DNA of 63,924 nucleotides, the filler included, from Salisapilia sapeloensis CBS 127946 (lineage: Eukaryota; Protista; Oomycota), in the NCBI GenBank assembly GCA_023334545.1. It is 14 parts of 14 records of this genome, joined end to end, with 100 filler letters (N's around TTAATTAATTAA, not from the genome) between each part and the next. Parts side by side here need not be neighbours in the genome. Positions count along the whole stretch, not along the records: positions 7,077 to 12,365 come from JAADVB010000627.1; 13 more parts are not named here. One strand, written 5' to 3'. Under the pieces are notes generated by a model. That model was not told the DNA's origin and searched no databases. It saw only the letters and a program-made list of their open reading frames with translations. The translations under genes and the position numbers were made by a program. Below are positions 5,438 through 12,465 of the stretch, in pieces. Numbering within the stretch: position 1 is the first letter of the stretch; every line of letters begins with the position of its first letter.

Positions 5438-8400
5438 GTCCCTTTTATGCTCATGGCGTAACTACCATCCTCTATCAACTCAACATCCCATCACTTGAAG
5501 TGACGAAGTGACATGAGTCTTATTCCTGTAAAAGTAGTTCTACATCAATAGGATACAGTATACGAGTACATCCAGTAGACAACTTCTGTAATTTTTATGA
5601 GCATGATGTATGTGGTGACCGTTCCTGAAGATGTAGCATCTAGTTTTATTCACTGTAAACATATTCGGCATGTATGGCTACTTCTGCACTTTCAGACATA
5701 TTCATTCATCTTGTAAATAAGATCTGTATTCTATTGTCTATTACACGACGCCAACATATACACAAGCTTTAAGAATTGTGGGCAATCGTCTTTGAAGGGC
5801 AGCAACCTTCTTACGAAGAAACCGAGTGCTCCTTGTCACTGCCTTTAGTGATATAAAGAAAACCTCTTGTAGATGTCAAATTTTATAGCTCGCAGCTTGG
5901 ATAGTACGAGAAAGTTAACAACATATACTACTCAAGTGAAACTGCTAATATCGTCGATAGACATCCTAATAGCTCTTTAGCGTTCTGCATCAAGCTATTT
6001 GCATACATGGGATACAAATTATATTGAGCTGTGGCTGCAGCACGGTATCAAAGGCAATAGGTAAGTTGGCTTCGCAAGGAATAAATCTTACACCAGATCG
6101 GGTACTCTACCACGTTTCATCATATCTCTTATGCTAGTAGATAGGAACCTGTTGATGCAAAAGACAAATCGATACAAATCGAAGATGTAGGCTTTATAGT
6201 AGTAGAAGCATTTATAAGAGCTCACAGCTCAAGTATCTATGCTAGAGCGGCATGATGACATCAACGCTTTCAAATTTTGATGAAGGTGGTCAAATATAAC
6301 CAGAATGAGGAAAGACAGCATACAACGCTCTAGCATCCTTCGTGACAGCAAACGGACAGCATACACTGTCAGCGTGTTTACAACAGCAGAGCATGTCTAG
6401 AAGCATATTTGGCCATGGACACTCGAGCAAATCTAATATGCTAGTGGTGAGCTCTTATGCCGAGCTGACTGCTATCCAGAACGAAATGCTGGTGACACGA
6501 CAAAGCTTAAACAATGCGAAGCATTGAAGACACGTGAATAAGTAGTTCACACTCTTTTGTTTTGCTATCACTTTTTCCTGTGGACTGTTGTCGAATCCCT
6601 GTACATGACTCCTATTAACTACAAGCATTTGCTTGTTATATATATAAGTAAGAATATTACACCACAAACCTTCACATTGGATAAATTAATACAATTCTGT
6701 ACAGCAAGCAGAGCAATATTAAAAGACAACATCATATGTGTGTTAAAGCCAACGATCAATATAGCGGTTTCTATCTGTAAACTTGCGTATGCTGCCAGAT
6801 CGTGCAAACCTTTATCGAACACATTTTAATTGAAATTCTATGGCAAACGTTAACACATCTAACACTATAAGCGATGAAATCAACCATACTGCTTTAAATC
6901 GTATCTTTAGAGCCTTATTTTTCAAACAAACTACCGCTTGTACCAACAAAAGCATAATCAAATTCGGTGACTTTAANNNNNNNNNNNNNNNNNNNNNNNN
7001 NNNNNNNNNNNNNNNNNNNNTTAATTAATTAANNNNNNNNNNNNNNNNNNNNNNNNNNNNNNNNNNNNNNNNNNNNCCAAGCAGGAAGGTCAAACAAGGC
7101 AGCCTCAAGCACAGTAAGACTGGCTATTCTAAACGTACACGAAAAGGAAGCATGTACTCACTGCGAATTTGAATGGGACGCGTGCACTCGGCAATTCGAG
7201 AAGCATCCAAGCATCCCAACCCGGAGATCATGAGATGGGGCAGGTAGCTTCAAGTGCGACATAGCCGGCGCTACCGCAGCCGATGACGAGCGTACGCAAG
7301 TTGAAGGCACGATGGCGGATGCCGCCACGCTTCGATATGGTGTCGCGATGTGCTACTCGACTGAGCAAGTCTCACCGGCGAGGACGTGGGCGCTCCGATA
7401 GCTTTGATGTTTCGCGTATGCACAAGTAGACCAAGGCACTTTGCCGAGAAAATGTACACGTATCTTTGTTGTGGAAACCTCGCCATCCGTATCTCGTTCC
7501 TTTAGCTATACGAATGACTTTTGTTAGTTGTATCTAGTTTCCTTCATTATGCCAACCTTTCGCTCTGCTTTCGGAAGGGAGCGTACCACATCGTCCACTG
7601 CAAAGCGACTTGAAGCCAGGTTTCCGTCGTATCCGCACTGCCTCCACGATCATCGCGAATTCCACGGGGGATGCTGCTCTTCTACATCCAAACGAGTCAC
7701 GACGAACAACCTACCTGCGTACACTGGATGAGTCACCACAGCTGAGTCAGCTCCCACAGCGCCGCCCGCTTCAGCATGCACTTCAACACACACCCTCCGC
7801 GCTACCAACCCGAACAGCGTAGACCGCATCCACTTCCTGTTAGCTCAAAAATGACACGTGTATTCACTTTCGGACTCGTGGAGGCTTTGAACAGCCTCTA
7901 CTGCTGTGCTGCTCGTCACTCGCCCAGTGTCCACAGCGAGTGACACCAGCGCTCTTGTAGACACTACTCACGACAGCACAAAGCGTGAGTCAGGGCCGGT
8001 GCACCCGTCCAGTCTCGCGCTCCTCGATTACATGACATGACCCGTCTCGAGCACTCCTGTCCAGCATTTCTCGTCCATCGGATCGTCCGGTACGCCGACC
8101 ATTATCGTTTCCTAGCTCACGACGAACACCAGGTGCCTCAACCGATAGACGGCGACGGGCGGAAACCCACGTGCTGCGTCCTCTCACTACGTGTCTTCTA
8201 GTGCAAGTGGTTTCCGATAGGCTTCATCACGACCGACAGTTCGTACCGCATCACTCTCTCGAGCCGCTGATCCTCATCCATTCGGAGCTTCACGAAGCTT
8301 ACACCAGCACAAAAACACGCCACCACCCTTGCTTCGATACTCAGAGTACCACTCTTCCGCCTTTCGTCTGCACCAGGGAGGGAGGTCAGAGCAAGCGTGA

Positions 8401-10530
8401 AGCTGGCATCGTCCGTGGACTTCTCACCAACTTCTTATCATCCATCGGAACGCACCGAGTAATCCGGTGCCAGCCTCACGTTCAAATACACGAACGGCTT
8501 GCCACTGCCGTCGCTCTTCGCTAGGCGCCCGTCACCCTGAAGGACTCCTGCAGTCCACAAGATGGGATCGTAGTCGTCTCTCCGTGGTGCGCGACTGCAT
8601 GCTTGTCAAAGGAGCGGTCGGTGGACCCCGTCTCGGCTGTGGCCTTGGCAACGACGAGTGTGGCGCATTGGGTCTCGCTAGACCTGGAGACGGATGCACA
8701 GACCATGGCACGCGCAGAACTCCTGGCATCAGCGTCACCCCACAATCTCCGCACCGACGGACAAGCTGCGCCAGACAGCGCCCGATCCAGAATTTCGTTC
8801 GCGCGTCACCATTTGGCACGCGGCCTTCATACGGAGATGCACCTCGACAGCAGAATTTCGTGTCAAAAGTATCTTGACGGCGCGGCTACTTCAGTTCGAA
8901 CTTCATTCCCGTACCATACGTCCAAAGCCGATAAGCCGGCACCAGCTCGACTTTGTCCGGACGAGACCTTTGATTCGGAGGCAGTTCGACGTTTATGTAC
9001 CATCCATCCATAATAAGACCCTCGCACCGGCAGATTTCACGCAAGCCGTACACCGGACTAGAACTGCGTGCCGGAAATACACGACTCGGAGCCTGCCGAG
9101 GTTACCGCTGCAATCCAGAAACCGAATTCGGCGATGACTACTGGCACGAGTTTACAACGGAACATTTCTCGCGTTCGGCCAATACACTAACGCAACATCT
9201 GAATCAACAGCGCAAATGTCTACCGGCGTTCATCTAATCCACAGCCACCGTTGAAGCCCCATGAAGGCCGATCCTTCCGCGAACAACCTTCGCAGACACA
9301 CACGAAAAATCTGGGCGGTACCGGCTTGGTACTCATCCACTTGTCGTCAACCGCGCCGAACGCCGACGTCACCTGCCAGGTGCGTTAACTCGAGAGCGTT
9401 CACGAAGCACCTTGAAGAGCCGTGGATGGAAGAGGAAACCGCCCGCCGTTCTCCCGTGTTCACCATCGCCTCTATACGCATTTCCATCAGCGATCCGGAC
9501 CCGGTTCTTGGATCAACCGACGTTGGCGCGACTTCCATCGATGACCGCTTCAGGGATTCTGATCTCGTGCCTTTTTCTTCCTCAGCCATCGCTCAGTCGG
9601 AGCTCGCGCCTCGGCCAAGTCCGCGTGTGCGAGCGAGCGTGAGAGTAGCTCCGCGACGCTACGATCGCGTTCGTTTTATACGAGTCGAAGAGCTGAAGTT
9701 TGCGTTCTTGCAGGAAAACGGCCGCTTCAACATGGCTACGAGTTTATGCATCAGATCGGGGATCCTCGGATGTTTTGGAGGGAGCGATCAGCTCATTGCA
9801 CAATAGGCAATCGCAGAGGCGTGGACACCTAGACGAGCAAAAGGATTCCGGCTCGCACTCGCCCCAGACGACGCAGCTCGCTCGCCTCGCATTTATGAAA
9901 ATTCGGTCCGAATTTTTGAAATTTTCACCAGGCTGTGAAATGCTGCAACTCGCGCAACACTGAACAGAAGACACTGATACAAGTACACTCGCTCGGTCCG
10001 ATGTGTGTGTACACTGGCGCCAACGGGAAGGAGAAACGCGGCGCCCACGACTTGATCTCAGATTGGTGTAAAGGACCGCCGGGTGCCAGCTCAGCCACCC
10101 AGAAGGCTTGCAAAGGCGGTGGCTCCCCCACCCGAGCGCCCATCCTGTGCTGGAGGATACCACCATGTGGCCGTCTGCTCTCGCGCCTGACTTGGTCTGA
10201 GTATGTGCTTTAACAAAGACACCGGTGCCCAGGTCGTCGTGTCGGTTGGACGTCTCGGAACACCGCGCCGCCGATACGATGGGACAGACGCGCGTATACT
10301 CTACGACAGTCAAGTCATAAAAAGGTAAAAAGTTTCCGGGGAAATCGAAAAATTGACACCAGCTGTTCCGATACAAATTCCGAGTCGACTCGAGGATGTT
10401 GAAGAGCTCGGACGAAAAAAGGCTCTCGGCGATCATTTTCTTTTCACACCTCTCGGACGCAAGCGACGCCGTGATCCTCCACTAGCACTTTAGTTTGCAC
10501 CGGATCCGCTTCCTTTGACCATCCACCCAC

Positions 10531-12276
10531 ATGTACAACCGGGCTTTCCCACACGCAGGCGCGGCCGAGCCAGTCATGGTGCGCAGCCCTCGTGTCGACG
10601 ACAGCGCCGCGTTCCCGCACGCCAAGGAGCAGCGCTACACGCCCTACTCGACGGCTCCGATGCACCGGAGGCGGCCCAGCAGCACGCAGCTCCCGTCCGA
10701 CTCGCTCCAGTCCCTCGCATCGCTCGAGGCAGCGAGCAGTTTCGGCGCCGGGAGCACCGACAGCAGCGGACACGACTCGTCTTCGCCGTCAGACAGGAAG
10801 CTGCCGCAGAAAGAAGGACAGGCACTGCCAGGCGTGTCGGCGCTGCTGCGAGCCGCAGTGCCGAGCGCTTCGCCGGACCGAGCGGACGTCCCGGAAGCCA
10901 ACATGACGCCCGTGATGAACCAGACGTACGCCGTGGACCCGTGGAAGGCTGCGGCGGCGCAGACCGAGAGTCCGTCGGACGCGGCCTCCGTCGCGTACAT
11001 GCAGCCTCCGCGGTCGGCGGAAGCGTACCCTTCGTATCAGAACCAGTTTTCCCAGTGGCGTCCGCAAGGTCCACCGACGAGAGTCACGAGGGCGCAGTCG
11101 TACCACGACGATGACCCGCAGTACGCCTTCGCGCAACCCCCGGCAGCCCCTTCGCGCGCGCCAGCCAGAGCGCGACACGCTCGGCACTTTTCGGACGGCG
11201 CGCTCGTCTTCCAGCCGTTCGCAGTCTCGGACCACCAGCGGCAGTCGTCATATCAGGACAGCGACCTCTTGGCACACGCGCAACGCTCCTACAGCCTCGA
11301 CAGCTCGGACAGCAGCGGCGCGGGCGAAGCGCCAGTGGCCGACAACCAGACGCAGACGCCCAAGAACTCTCGGTATCTGCGCGAGATGGACCGTCGGAAC
11401 ATCATCTCGCGCATCGATCAGGGCGAGAAGCAGGCTGCGCTGGCCAAGGAGTATCAGGTCAGTCGCGCGGCCATCTGCAACTTGAACAAGCACCGGGACG
11501 AGGTCATCGCGCGCAAGGGCGAGAACCCGATGGCCAAGCACCCGAAGAAGCCTCGGTCGAAGACGGGTCGGAGCAAGGCCAAGTCGTCGAGTAAGGCCCA
11601 GTCTCCGGTGCTCACGTCCCAGAAGGAGGTGTCTGCCGGTCCTGGCATCCACGAGCTCCGGTCGCGCTCCGTGGCGCTGCTGCTGACGTCTCTGCGCAAT
11701 CCGGAGACGAGTCTGGCTGAGTTCCAGCGCTGCAGCGAGAGGCTGATGCGACTACTAGTGGAAGAGGCGCTGGCACTAGTGCCGATGCGACAGGTGCCGG
11801 TGTCGTCGGAGGAAGCAGTCAAGTCGGACGGAGTGGGCAGCAAGCACCCTCCGTTGGGCGTGTCGATGGAGCAGCAGCAGGTCGGCGGGTGTCCGATGCT
11901 CCGCGTCTTCCACGAGCTGGAGCCGGAGCAGCCGACGGGTTTCATCTCGCCGACGGAATGGCAGCTTCCTGGAGGACTGCAGAGCCACAACGTCTTCCTC
12001 TTGAGCGAGATGTTCCAGTCGGGCGAAGAGCTGTGTCGAGTGGTGCAGCAGCTTCTGGAGCGAGGCGTGACGCAGGACAAGATCCTGGTCGTGTCGCTGT
12101 TCACGCTGCCGGACGCCGTCTCGTTCCTCCACGCCCACTTCCCCCACGTCCGCGTCGTGACGTCTCAGATGGTCCAGTTCGGCCGCGACGACAGTCGTCC
12201 GGACTTTTCCCTGTCCGACGTGGACACCGTGTCGCATCGGTTCCAATACGTCTACGCGACTCGACAGACCGTCTAG
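10531..12276 (+). CDS. Disordered N-terminus + CENP-B/psq-type HTH + degenerate uracil phosphoribosyltransferase-fold domain
   Basis: 581 aa, intronless, GC-rich. HTH near 11371-11520 (RYLREMDRRNIISRIDQGEKQAALAKEYQVSRAAICNLNKHRDEV). UPRTase-like near 11641-12255 (LLTSLRNPETSLAEFQRCSERLMRLLVEEAL; LLERGVTQDKILVVSL; FPHVRVVT). Confidence 0.82.
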   Translation: MYNRAFPHAGAAEPVMVRSPRVDDSAAFPHAKEQRYTPYSTAPMHRRRPSSTQLPSDSLQSLASLEAASSFGAGSTDSSGHDSSSPSDRKLPQKEGQALPGVSALLRAAVPSASPDRADVPEANMTPVMNQTYAVDPWKAAAAQTESPSDAASVAYMQPPRSAEAYPSYQNQFSQWRPQGPPTRVTRAQSYHDDDPQYAFAQPPAAPSRAPARARHARHFSDGALVFQPFAVSDHQRQSSYQDSDLLAHAQRSYSLDSSDSSGAGEAPVADNQTQTPKNSRYLREMDRRNIISRIDQGEKQAALAKEYQVSRAAICNLNKHRDEVIARKGENPMAKHPKKPRSKTGRSKAKSSSKAQSPVLTSQKEVSAGPGIHELRSRSVALLLTSLRNPETSLAEFQRCSERLMRLLVEEALALVPMRQVPVSSEEAVKSDGVGSKHPPLGVSMEQQQVGGCPMLRVFHELEPEQPTGFISPTEWQLPGGLQSHNVFLLSEMFQSGEELCRVVQQLLERGVTQDKILVVSLFTLPDAVSFLHAHFPHVRVVTSQMVQFGRDDSRPDFSLSDVDTVSHRFQYVYATRQTV

Positions 12277-12465
12277 ACGTCGTAGCGTCCAACGTAGCGT
12301 GCCCTTGCATATTTATGCGAAAACATTCTCACGACCACTAAACACAAATACATCTCCGATAAAAGNNNNNNNNNNNNNNNNNNNNNNNNNNNNNNNNNNN
12401 NNNNNNNNNTTAATTAATTAANNNNNNNNNNNNNNNNNNNNNNNNNNNNNNNNNNNNNNNNNNNN

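What the first reader, a model, noticed from the sequence alone, without database searches (positions are those of the whole stretch)
10531..12276. HTH fused to a dead UPRTase: candidate nucleotide-sensing transcription factor
Architecture: about 280 aa of S/P/A/Q-rich disorder (activation-domain-like), a CENP-B/psq HTH (a fold shared with pogo/Tc5 transposases), a basic NLS-like linker (KHPKKPRSKTGRSKAK), then a UPRTase fold. The UPRTase N-terminal helices that form the oligomer interface are well kept (TSLRNPET...F....ERLMRLLVEEAL). Every catalytic signature is eroded: RAG becomes QQQ, the PRPP loop LLDPMxATG becomes LLSEMFQSG, and the uracil-binding YIxPGLGDFGDRY is gone. Bacteria repurposed PRTase folds as regulators (PurR: HTH+PRTase; PyrR: UPRTase-like). 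This looks like an independent eukaryotic version, possibly built from a domesticated transposase DNA-binding domain, that could sense GTP/PRPP/UMP, oligomerise, or hetero-oligomerise with true UPRT. Function is inferred; I cannot check whether it has been described.
Basis: partly seen in the sequence, partly recalled or inferred. Interest (0 to 1): 0.75.

Follow-up and report, generated by a model that had tools for sequence, protein, structure and literature searches.

The report
Oomycete HTH fused to dead UPRTase
One intron-less gene encodes a DNA-binding helix-turn-helix joined to a uracil phosphoribosyltransferase fold that has lost its catalytic residues; it belongs to a conserved family, seen so far only in oomycetes and with no study found, that databases often mislabel as the enzyme.

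Summary
Window 10531-12276 (+) is one uninterrupted 581-aa CDS. It has a disordered S/P/A/Q-rich N-terminus, a CENP-B_N/psq-like three-helix HTH (aa 278-339), a basic linker, and a UPRTase fold (aa 373-581; Pfam E 8e-21). The closest solved structure is Toxoplasma gondii UPRT.

The enzyme signatures are gone. Both PRPP-binding arginines are missing, the DPxxATGGS loop reads SEMFQSGEE, and a helix replaces the C-terminal uracil/catalytic-Asp loop. NCBIfam UPRT equivalog scores lie far below cut-off.

It is not a one-off. More than 120 proteins share the architecture, and every named one is from an oomycete, with several paralogs per genome. This HTH subtype occurs almost only with the UPRT-like domain. 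In Phytophthora orthologs the dead domain is under purifying selection (dN/dS 0.05-0.24).

A homodimer is predicted through the conserved N-terminal helices, where the family's invariant residues concentrate.

Best reading: a dimeric sequence-specific DNA-binding regulator that uses the dead UPRTase as its dimerisation scaffold. Ligand sensing, as in bacterial PurR or archaeal GfcR, is possible but unsupported, because the former pocket is poorly conserved. I saw no sign of a transposase origin and found no paper on the family. RNA evidence was inconclusive.

The parts
10531..12276 (+). Complete intron-less CDS of the 581-aa HTH + UPRTase-like protein, including the stop codon at 12274-12276
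   Evidence: ORF list. GC3 is 0.83 in one phase throughout. A relative's 1998-nt contig spans 10368-12353 with only one 3-nt indel inside the ORF.
10531..11361 (+). N-terminal low-complexity, probably disordered region (aa 1-277). It varies in length and cannot be aligned across homologs.
   Evidence: 57% S/P/A/Q/T/G and 15% hydrophobic, with coding-type GC3 of 0.81. No Pfam family. Homolog N-termini range from 37 to about 440 aa.
10825..10848 (+). Conserved short linear motif LPGVSALL (aa 99-106) inside the disordered region
   Evidence: The motif LP..[SAT]..L occurs in 35 of 74 family N-termini, against 1.9 expected from shuffles. It is present from Albugo to Phytophthora.
11362..11547 (+). 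CENP-B_N/psq-like helix-turn-helix block (aa 278-339), the most conserved part of the family. It ends in the near-invariant AKHPKK motif.
   Evidence: 13 invariant and 25 nearly invariant columns fall in aa 278-339. Helices at aa 285-296, 301-307, 312-320 and 322-327 have pLDDT 91-97. Pfam HTH_23, HTH_7 and CENP-B_N across the family. Fold matches 2elh and 1hlv. dN/dS 0.05-0.06.
11548..11646 (+). Basic, low-confidence linker (aa 340-372; PRSKTGRSKAKSSSK...). It is NLS-like by composition only.
   Evidence: pLDDT 45-57. It is variable in the family. dN/dS is about 0.46-0.49 in the unsaturated Phytophthora pairs.
11647..12273 (+). UPRTase-fold pseudo-enzyme domain (aa 373-581)
   Evidence: Pfam PF14681 at E 7.9e-21. 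Foldseek match to T. gondii UPRT 1jlr at E 3.6e-16 and to C. albicans Fur1 7rh8. pLDDT is mostly above 90. dN/dS 0.05-0.24.
11662..11787 (+). N-terminal helices of the UPRT-like domain (aa 378-419), the core of the predicted homodimer interface. It contains the near-invariant R400, R404, E411 and L414.
   Evidence: Interface residues from the complex prediction. Six of the 13 nearly invariant residues fall among the 28 interface residues of 211, hypergeometric p = 0.003.
11872..11889 (+). Degenerate 'RAG' site (aa 448-453, QQQVGG). The PRPP-binding Arg is lost.
   Evidence: Profile alignment to five solved UPRTs. The Arg column has 0 R among 62 family members.
11992..12036 (+). Degenerate PRPP/5-phosphate loop (aa 488-502). 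It reads VFLLSEMFQSGEELC where true UPRTs have VMLLDPMCATAGSVC.
12169..12273 (+). C-terminal 35 residues (aa 547-581). They replace the uracil-binding/catalytic GLGDxGD hood with a family-specific helix (R570-x4-Y575).
   Evidence: Pfam and PDB alignments stop at aa 546. The model has a helix at aa 561-577. R570 is conserved in 54 of 62 members.

Best explanation
The gene encodes a member of a conserved protein family, seen so far only in oomycetes. In it a CENP-B_N/psq-like three-helix HTH is tethered by a flexible basic linker to a UPRTase fold that can no longer make UMP.

The most likely mechanism has three parts:
- The dead UPRTase keeps the dimer interface of its enzyme ancestors and serves as a dimerisation scaffold. 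It brings two HTH domains together so that the protein binds specific, probably two-part or palindromic, DNA sites in the nucleus and regulates transcription or chromatin.
- The variable disordered N-terminus, with its conserved LPG[LIV]S[SA][ML]L motif, recruits partner proteins.
- Paralogs within a genome diversify this function.

Shown here: the architecture, loss of the catalytic signatures, family-wide conservation, purifying selection, and the fold.

Predicted only: the homodimer.

Inferred: DNA binding, nuclear location and a regulatory role.
For: **One gene.** There is a single CDS with one codon phase.

**Conserved fusion.** The HTH block and the UPRT-like block co-occur in 80 of 80 aligned homologs. 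An HTH-only search returned 120 hits, nearly all carrying PF14681.

**HTH.**
- It is the most conserved part of the family, with 13 invariant columns and dN/dS 0.05-0.06.
- It is modelled at pLDDT above 90.
- It is closest in fold to Dan psq/CENP-B_N and to DNA-bound CENP-B.
- Other P. infestans CENPB/Psq HTH proteins bind defined DNA motifs on protein-binding microarrays, some of them palindromic (PMC11267843).

**Catalytic death.**
- The RAG Arg is absent in 62 of 62 members.
- In this protein the flexible-loop region has no Arg.
- The PRPP loop is degenerate.
- The C-terminal loop that carries the catalytic Asp is replaced. The residue roles come from PMC3570474.
- NCBIfam UPRT equivalogs score 31.8 against a cut-off of 114, and 26.9 against 208.

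**Selection.** dN/dS of the UPRT-like domain is 0.05 for P. infestans-P. cactorum (dS 0.38) and 0.235 for P. sojae-P. ramorum (dS 0.55).

**Dimer.**
- The ipSAE score is 0.55, against 0.01 for the best of 3 controls.
- The three runs agree in at least 86% of their contacts, and the partner's pLDDT is at least 80.
- In microbes the pass mark was reached by 21 of 30 proteins solved as pairs of one chain and by 0 of 23 solved as single chains.
- In eukaryotes it was reached by 17 of 29 and 0 of 30, but by only 1 of the 7 with no older solved relative.
- The interface is enriched in the family's invariant residues, p = 0.003.
- T. gondii UPRT is itself a dimer in solution (PMC3570474).
Against: - No experiment on any member was found, so DNA binding, nuclear localisation and dimerisation are untested.
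- The Pfam HTH hits in this protein are below threshold, and the fold-search E-values for the HTH are weak.
- The dimer prediction may be 'from memory', because UPRT dimers have been solved.
- A pure scaffold role does not obviously explain why a whole 210-residue fold stays under strong constraint. It also leaves unexplained the partial retention of an Asp plus a Ser/Thr-rich loop in most paralogs (D in 43 and S/T in 52 of 62 members).
- RNA evidence for a single transcript is only suggestive: the library type of the runs is guessed.
Confidence: 0.6

Rival explanations
1. Metabolite-responsive transcription factor. The dead UPRTase still binds a small phosphorylated ligand (a nucleotide, PRPP, UMP/UTP, GTP or a sugar phosphate). 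Ligand binding changes oligomeric state or HTH geometry, as in bacterial PurR and archaeal GfcR. This extends the best explanation rather than excluding it.
For: - Two independent precedents exist: PurR senses PRPP, and GfcR senses sugar phosphates through the retained Ser/Thr phosphate loop (PMC10838023).
- In T. gondii UPRT, GTP drives the change from dimer to tetramer (PMC3570474).
- Most family members keep the loop Asp (43 D plus 8 E of 62) and a Ser/Thr at the Thr position (52 of 62).
- The whole fold is under purifying selection.
Against: - Both PRPP-binding arginines and the uracil loop are gone.
- Acidic residues occupy the Gly position of the phosphate loop in 34 of 62 members.
- This protein has Ser for the Asp and reads Q-S-G-E-E.
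- The positions conserved in at least 70% of members are mostly hydrophobic core or interface, not pocket residues.
- PurR and GfcR, by contrast, keep the PRPP motif.
Confidence: 0.2
2. Chromatin or centromere-type DNA-binding protein, or a transposon-derived factor. The CENP-B-like HTH binds repeats or structural DNA rather than promoters, and the gene descends from a pogo/Tc-type transposase.
For: - The HTH resembles the CENP-B N-terminal domain and transposase or resolvase HTHs: Pfam CENP-B_N, HTH_23, HTH_28, HTH_29 and HTH_7, and the fold hits include IstA transposase.
- One family member is annotated 'reverse transcriptase, partial', probably a fused gene model.
Against: - No DDE or other transposase domain is present.
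- The HTH-only search found no transposase, only the same architecture.
- The gene sits in conserved synteny in four Phytophthora species, next to RRM_1 and Vps26 genes.
- Purifying selection and the absence of repeats around it also argue against this.
- The motifs bound by P. infestans CENPB proteins are not enriched at centromeres (PMC11267843).
Confidence: 0.12
3. It is still a working, if unusual, uracil phosphoribosyltransferase, as many database records name it.
For: The Pfam UPRTase domain scores above its gathering cut-off. JGI and NCBI name many homologs 'uracil phosphoribosyltransferase'.
Against: - All catalytic and substrate-binding signatures are absent.
- NCBIfam equivalog scores are far below their cut-offs.
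- The alignments end before the catalytic-Asp loop.
Confidence: 0.03
4. Gene-model artefact: two neighbouring genes, an HTH protein and a UPRT-like protein, are read through as one ORF.
For: No verified RNA data exist for this locus.
Against: - The frame is continuous with uniform GC3 and no stop.
- The fusion is conserved in all homologs across genera, and the P. ramorum and P. cactorum models are intron-less.
- A relative's 2.0-kb contig covers just the whole ORF plus short flanks.
Confidence: 0.02

Closest known systems
Uracil phosphoribosyltransferase of eukaryotic type (Toxoplasma gondii UPRT 1upf/1bd3/1jlr; Candida albicans Fur1 7rh8)
   Same: The fold is the same: Foldseek E 3.6e-16 and TM-score by target 0.66-0.74. 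The family profile matches at E 1e-33. The N-terminal helices and the dimer-forming surface are kept.
   Different: - It has no RAG Arg, no flexible-loop Arg, a degenerate DPxxATGGS loop, and no C-terminal uracil/catalytic-Asp loop.
- It scores below the NCBIfam equivalog cut-offs.
- It carries an N-terminal HTH and a long disordered region that the enzymes lack.
Bacillus subtilis / Lactococcus lactis PurR (HTH + PRT-like domain, PRPP-responsive repressor)
   Same: The design principle is the same: an N-terminal HTH fused to a non-catalytic PRT-fold domain, thought to derive from an enzyme (PMC10838023).
   Different: - The DNA-binding domain differs: winged helix in PurR, CENP-B_N/psq-like three-helix here.
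- The PRT subfamily differs.
- PurR keeps the PRPP motif and senses PRPP, whereas here the motif is eroded.
- PurR is bacterial and this protein is eukaryotic.
- No sequence relationship beyond the PRT fold was detected. PurR did not appear among the PDB sequence hits.
Haloferax volcanii GfcR (HTH + orotate-PRT-like domain, sugar-phosphate-responsive activator)
   Same: It is an HTH fused to a catalytically inactive PRT domain that lost the pyrophosphate contacts. This shows that such fusions work as transcription factors (PMC10838023).
   Different: - GfcR derives from OPRT (PyrE), not UPRT.
- It keeps the Ser/Thr 5-phosphate loop used for effector binding.
- It is archaeal and small, without a disordered N-terminus.
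Oomycete CENPB / Pipsqueak HTH transcription factors (P. infestans PITG_06978, PITG_00015 and others)
   Same: The broad HTH class is the same and so is the lineage. Those proteins bind defined motifs (TAACA core; GTTAAC/GTTTAAC palindromes) on protein-binding microarrays (PMC11267843).
   Different: Those proteins have no UPRT-like domain. The P. infestans ortholog of this gene (PITG_11803) is not among the proteins tested there, and no held paper mentions it.
PyrR (bacterial UPRT-like attenuation protein)
   Same: It is a PRT-fold protein of pyrimidine metabolism used as a regulator (own knowledge; it is named as a PRT-family regulator in PMC10838023).
   Different: PyrR binds RNA, has no HTH, and retains UPRT activity and a nucleotide-binding site.

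Membership tests
Uracil phosphoribosyltransferase, functional enzyme (EC 2.4.2.9; NCBIfam TIGR01091 / NF001097 equivalogs) | Score at or above the curated equivalog cut-off | tested here: not met
   NF001097 scores 31.8 bits against a cut-off of 114. TIGR01091 scores 26.9 against 208.35. The P. sojae and Albugo homologs also fall below.
Uracil phosphoribosyltransferase, functional enzyme | PRPP-binding Arg of the RAG motif (MtUPRT Arg77) | tested here: not met
   The aligned column holds Q in the window protein and no R among 62 family members. The residue's role comes from PMC3570474.
Uracil phosphoribosyltransferase, functional enzyme | Flexible-loop Arg (MtUPRT Arg102; the R of QRDE/ARDE) | tested here: not met
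   The aligned window segment GFISPTEWQLPGG contains no Arg or Lys.
Uracil phosphoribosyltransferase, functional enzyme | PRPP/5-phosphate loop D-P-x-x-A-T-G/A-G-S, including the catalytically important Pro | tested here: not met
   The window reads S-E-M-F-Q-S-G-E-E. In the family, Pro is present in 3 of 62 members and the Gly position is E or D in 34 of 62.
Uracil phosphoribosyltransferase, functional enzyme | C-terminal uracil-binding loop with the catalytic Asp (GLGDxGD; MtUPRT Asp198) | tested here: not met
   Pfam and PDB alignments end at aa 546. The remaining 35 residues have no such motif and are modelled as a helix.
Pfam UPRTase domain (PF14681) / type I PRT fold | Score above the gathering cut-off, and a matching fold | tested here: met
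   74.9 bits against a cut-off of 27. Foldseek matches UPRT structures at E 1e-12 to 4e-16.
CENP-B_N / psq-type HTH (PF04218; PROSITE HTH_PSQ) | Score above the Pfam gathering cut-off | tested here: not met
   The window protein scores 13.5-14.6 bits against a cut-off of 21.2. 17 of 62 family members hit at E below 0.1, best 7.6e-6. Some homologs are named 'HTH psq-type domain-containing protein' by UniProt.
CENP-B_N / psq-type HTH | Three-helix HTH fold closest to solved psq/CENP-B N-terminal domains | tested here: inconclusive
   The top two Foldseek matches are 2elh (Dan; probability 0.99, TM 0.61) and 1hlv (CENP-B bound to DNA; rmsd 1.4 A over 53 columns). Their E-values are 0.07-0.24, and generic HTHs follow closely.
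PurR/GfcR-type HTH-PRT transcription regulators | N-terminal HTH fused to a non-catalytic PRT domain | tested here: met
   This is a shared architecture only, not common descent.
PurR/GfcR-type HTH-PRT transcription regulators | Retained PRPP/5-phosphate-binding motif used for effector sensing | tested here: not met
   The motif is eroded. PurR and GfcR conserve it (PMC10838023).
PurR/GfcR-type HTH-PRT transcription regulators | Effector-modulated binding to promoter DNA | not testable with these tools
   This needs EMSA or DAP-seq together with ligand assays.
pogo/Tc1-type transposase or a domesticated derivative | DDE catalytic domain, or detectable transposase relatives of the HTH | tested here: not met
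   No DDE family was found in Pfam. The HTH-only search returned 120 hits, none a transposase. That search is word-based and limited to proteins of 320-1017 aa, so distant relatives could be missed.

The most novel reading that the evidence does not exclude
This is a third, independent invention of the 'HTH + dead phosphoribosyltransferase' metabolite-sensing transcription factor, after bacterial PurR and archaeal GfcR, and the first in eukaryotes. The eroded UPRT pocket has been retuned to a new small-molecule effector, and the paralog family forms an oomycete-specific metabolite-to-transcription signalling system.
Probability: 0.2. Interest if true: 0.8.

Novelty: new variant of a known kind. 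Interest (0 to 1): 0.55.

Why it matters
- **Convergent design.** If the reading is right, oomycetes, which include the Phytophthora, Pythium, Plasmopara and Albugo pathogens, carry a lineage-specific family of DNA-binding regulators built on a pseudo-enzyme. This would be a eukaryotic convergence on the design of PurR and GfcR. There are about 3-8 paralogs per genome.
- **Gap in the literature.** The family does not appear in the oomycete transcription-factor literature that I could search.
- **Mis-annotation.** Many genome records label these genes 'uracil phosphoribosyltransferase'. That would inflate pyrimidine-salvage gene counts in metabolic reconstructions. It also matters for any use of UPRT-based tools such as 5-FU or 4-thiouracil tagging in these organisms.
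- **Research and control interest.** The near-invariant 62-residue HTH block and the apparent restriction to oomycetes make the family a clean target for functional genomics, and possibly for control.

Tried and rejected
**Calls that failed or found nothing**
- The RNA test was inconclusive. All runs that hold the locus have a guessed library type and are kept only as contigs. They therefore cannot show a transcript, its ends or its strand.
- I could not compute dN/dS against the roughly 95%-identical relative (organism B). Read laying lists only 40 of its 310 differences and allows a single call.
- The two Schumacher papers on T. gondii UPRT (PMC117517, PMC1170660) are not held. I therefore did not map GTP-site residues.
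- Literature searches for the family found nothing. The terms were UPRTase + Phytophthora, PITG_11803, UPRT + pseudoenzyme, and UPRT/oomycete/HTH.

**Readings rejected**
- A missing 3' exon carrying the uracil loop. The family's conserved C-terminal RxxxxY helix aligns to the window's last residues just before the stop.
- Genes in the 3.4 kb upstream, including the 230-aa minus-strand ORF at 9744-10436. There is no Pfam hit, no codon periodicity, no Rfam family and no tandem repeat.
- The long antisense ORFs inside the CDS (for example 11454-12104 on the minus strand). They are by-products of GC3-rich coding.

**Not run**
- The exhaustive representative-library search, on cost grounds. 'Oomycete-only' therefore rests on three word-indexed searches and the ESM Atlas cluster taxa.
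- The source organism was not identified. In the family tree the protein is a lone branch in a basal polytomy, outside the named Phytophthora, Pythium, Globisporangium, Lagenidium and Albugo groups.
Full report
**What is in the sequence.**
- The piece 7077-12365 holds one convincing gene, the ORF 10531-12276 on the + strand, 581 aa.
- Its ATG is the first possible start; an in-frame TGA ends at 10518.
- GC at third codon positions is 0.81, 0.87, 0.78 and 0.82 in the N-terminal, HTH, linker and UPRT-like segments, always in the same phase.
- The 3.4 kb upstream shows no periodicity (0.48-0.66 in every phase), no Pfam hit in any ORF, no Rfam family and no tandem repeat.
- So this is a single intron-less CDS with a long non-coding stretch upstream.

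**Domains.**
- Pfam places a UPRTase domain (PF14681) at aa 379-546: E 7.9e-21, 74.9 bits against a cut-off of 27, covering only profile positions 5-181 of 206.
- The best solved relatives are T. gondii UPRT (E 1.6e-12) and C. albicans Fur1. With a family profile the T. gondii match rises to E 1e-33.
- An AlphaFold2 model of aa 272-581, built on 62 aligned sequences, has mean pLDDT 86. It shows a four-helix N-terminal bundle, a low-confidence linker and a compact alpha/beta domain.
- Foldseek matches that domain to UPRT structures at E 1e-12 to 4e-16.
- The HTH scores below Pfam thresholds in this protein (CENP-B_N E 0.06, HTH_23 0.08).
- Across the family, HTH_23 is hit in 56 of 62 members, HTH_7 in 41 and CENP-B_N in 17, best E 7.6e-6.
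- Folded alone, the HTH is closest to the psq/CENP-B_N domain of Drosophila Dan (2elh) and to DNA-bound CENP-B (1hlv, 1.4 A over 53 columns). Pax paired domains and the IstA transposase HTH follow. The Foldseek E-values are weak, 0.07 and above.
- 'CENP-B_N/psq-like HTH' is therefore a fair label, but strict membership is not proven.
- Residues 1-277 are 57% S/P/A/Q/T/G with no family match.

**The enzyme is dead.** I aligned the family profile to five solved UPRTs and counted residues per column.
- The Arg of the RAG motif faces Q448. No member of 62 has Arg in that column.
- The flexible-loop Arg (QRDE/ARDE) faces the window segment GFISPTEWQLPGG, which contains no basic residue.
- The PRPP loop VMLLDPMCATAGS reads VFLLSEMFQSGEE. 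In the family, Pro survives in 3 of 62 members, the Gly position is Glu or Asp in 34 of 62, and the Asp is kept in 43 of 62 but not in this protein.
- Every alignment stops at aa 546. The last 35 residues are modelled as a helix instead of the GLGDxGD loop.
- According to PMC3570474, the two arginines bind PRPP (one also acts in catalysis), and the Asp of the C-terminal loop is catalytic.
- The NCBIfam UPRT equivalogs score 31.8 against 114 and 26.9 against 208.
- The C-terminus is complete: the family's conserved RxxxxY helix aligns to RFQYVY just before the stop.

**It is a family, not an accident.**
- Three word-indexed searches gave 89, 92 and 120 hits.
- Every named hit is from an oomycete: Phytophthora, Nothophytophthora, Plasmopara, Pythium, Globisporangium, Lagenidium or Albugo. 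No hit is named Saprolegnia or Aphanomyces.
- The nearest ESM Atlas cluster is 'HTH psq-type domain-containing protein' (UPRTase 100%, CENP-B_N 62%), with 52 members, all Oomycota.
- All 80 aligned homologs have both the HTH block and the UPRT-like block.
- The HTH-only search recovered almost only proteins carrying PF14681 and no transposase.
- Genomes hold several paralogs, some in tandem. Examples are P. oligandrum 010809/010810 and a second copy 6.6 kb downstream in P. sojae.
- The window protein is 43-53% identical to the others over the core. In the tree it sits alone in a basal polytomy. Its source organism is unidentified.

**Constraint.**
- The HTH block (aa 278-339) carries 13 invariant and 25 nearly invariant columns.
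- I took four Phytophthora orthologs from their genomic loci and computed Nei-Gojobori dN/dS for the two pairs with unsaturated dS.

| Region | P. infestans-P. cactorum | P. sojae-P. ramorum |
|---|---|---|
| dS over the UPRT-like domain | 0.38 | 0.55 |
| HTH, dN/dS | 0.05 | 0.06 |
| Linker, dN/dS | 0.46 | 0.49 |
| UPRT-like domain, dN/dS | 0.05 | 0.235 |

- The pseudo-enzyme domain is therefore under purifying selection.
- In a roughly 95%-identical relative (organism B), a 1998-nt contig covers 10368-12353 with 88 substitutions. It has only one 3-nt indel inside the ORF.
- In the same relative, 7078-8953 differs at 168 positions with many indels that are not multiples of three.
- That contig brackets the ORF neatly and carries adapter remnants at its ends. 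However, the library type is only guessed and contigs cannot show transcripts, so I count this as suggestive only.

**How it probably works.**
- A homodimer of aa 371-581 scored ipSAE 0.55, against 0.01 for the best of three controls. The runs agree in at least 86% of contacts and pLDDT is at least 80.
- In microbes the pass mark was reached by 21 of 30 proteins solved as pairs of one chain and by 0 of 23 solved as single chains. In eukaryotes it was 17 of 29 and 0 of 30, but only 1 of the 7 without an older solved relative. The pass may therefore reflect memory of solved UPRT dimers.
- The interface comprises aa 378-390, 400-419, 434-437 and 463-465. It contains 6 of the domain's 13 nearly invariant residues (R400, R404, L408, E411, L414, P465), hypergeometric p = 0.003.
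- Positions conserved elsewhere in the domain are mostly hydrophobic core. A family-specific E-P-x-x-P-T-G motif touches the partner's arginines.
- Few polar residues of the old active site are conserved.
- T. gondii UPRT is itself a dimer (PMC3570474).
- Other oomycete CENPB/Psq HTH proteins bind defined, partly palindromic motifs (PMC11267843).
- My best reading, at confidence 0.6, is that the dead UPRTase is mainly a dimerisation scaffold. It presents two highly constrained HTHs to DNA, with the disordered N-terminus as the effector arm.
- That arm carries a conserved LPG[LIV]S[SA][ML]L motif, found in 35 of 74 family members against 1.9 expected.

**Rivals.**
- Ligand sensing in the manner of PurR or GfcR (PMC10838023) remains possible at about 0.2. 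Most paralogs keep the loop Asp and a Ser/Thr-rich loop. But the arginines and the uracil loop are gone, acidic residues fill the phosphate loop, and PurR and GfcR keep the motif that is lost here.
- A chromatin or transposon-derived role (about 0.12) lacks support. There is no DDE domain and no transposase relative. The gene sits in conserved synteny next to RRM_1 and Vps26 genes in four Phytophthora species.
- Residual enzyme activity (0.03) and a two-gene artefact (0.02) are unlikely.

**Known or new.**
- Databases already hold the family, under the names 'Phosphoribosyltransferase domain-containing protein', 'HTH psq-type domain-containing protein' and, wrongly, 'uracil phosphoribosyltransferase'.
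- I found no paper that describes it.
- The P. infestans ortholog PITG_11803 is not among the proteins tested in the 2024 binding-specificity study.
- The design has bacterial and archaeal precedents, so I rate it a new variant of a known kind: a eukaryotic, UPRT-derived, psq-like-HTH version with an eroded pocket.

**Limits.**
- No verified RNA data were available.
- No exhaustive search was run outside the word-indexed database.
- The source organism is unknown.
- All functional statements beyond fold, motif loss, conservation and selection are inference.

Noticed in passing
window 10825-10848 (aa 99-106, LPGVSALL): A short linear motif, LPG[LIV]S[SA][ML]L, is conserved inside the otherwise unalignable disordered N-termini. 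It occurs in 35 of 74 family members, from Albugo to Phytophthora, against 1.9 expected from shuffles. It may be a docking site for a partner protein.
   Followed up: partly
window 7077-10530: About 3.4 kb upstream of the gene has no coding periodicity, no Pfam or Rfam match and no tandem repeat. In a roughly 95%-identical relative, the part 7078-9135 is about 9% diverged with many indels that are not multiples of three, including a 30-nt insertion and a 174-nt replacement near 8953-8960. Its nature is unknown; it could be a long intergenic region or a decayed element.
   Followed up: partly
window 10368-12353 (relative's contig, run X6): In organism B a 1998-nt contig with adapter remnants at its ends covers just the ORF plus 163 nt upstream and 77 nt downstream. 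Its depth differs from that of neighbouring contigs, and a gap is left at 10283-10367. It looks like an mRNA-sized unit, but the run's library type is only guessed.
   Followed up: no
L001 15760-17066 (Phytophthora sojae): A second HTH + UPRT-like paralog lies 6.6 kb downstream of the ortholog. Its reading frame is split between two overlapping ORFs, meaning an intron or a frameshift. Tandem pairs also occur in Pythium oligandrum (010809/010810), Pythium insidiosum (002560/002561) and Globisporangium polare (13192/13193).
   Followed up: partly
P0055 (Phytophthora sojae PHYSODRAFT_344412): This 529-aa family member carries two copies of the HTH block, near aa 65-125 and aa 470-520, flanking a truncated UPRT-like stretch. 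It is either a rearranged paralog or a merged gene model.
   Followed up: no
L001-L004 (Phytophthora sojae, P. infestans, P. ramorum, P. cactorum): Synteny downstream of the ortholog is conserved: an unnamed minus-strand gene, then an RRM_1 protein gene, then Vps26. P. ramorum has two extra genes in between. This argues that the gene is a stable chromosomal resident rather than a mobile one.
   Followed up: partly
database records of homologs: Many homologs are named 'uracil phosphoribosyltransferase' by JGI and NCBI, although the family lacks the catalytic residues and scores far below the NCBIfam equivalog cut-offs. This is probably a systematic mis-annotation in oomycete genomes.
   Followed up: partly
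window 10574-11074 (-), 11454-12104 (-), 11776-12246 (-): Long antisense ORFs of 156-216 aa lie inside the CDS. Their GC-rich position matches the sense-strand third codon position, so they are by-products of GC3-rich coding and not genes.
   Followed up: yes
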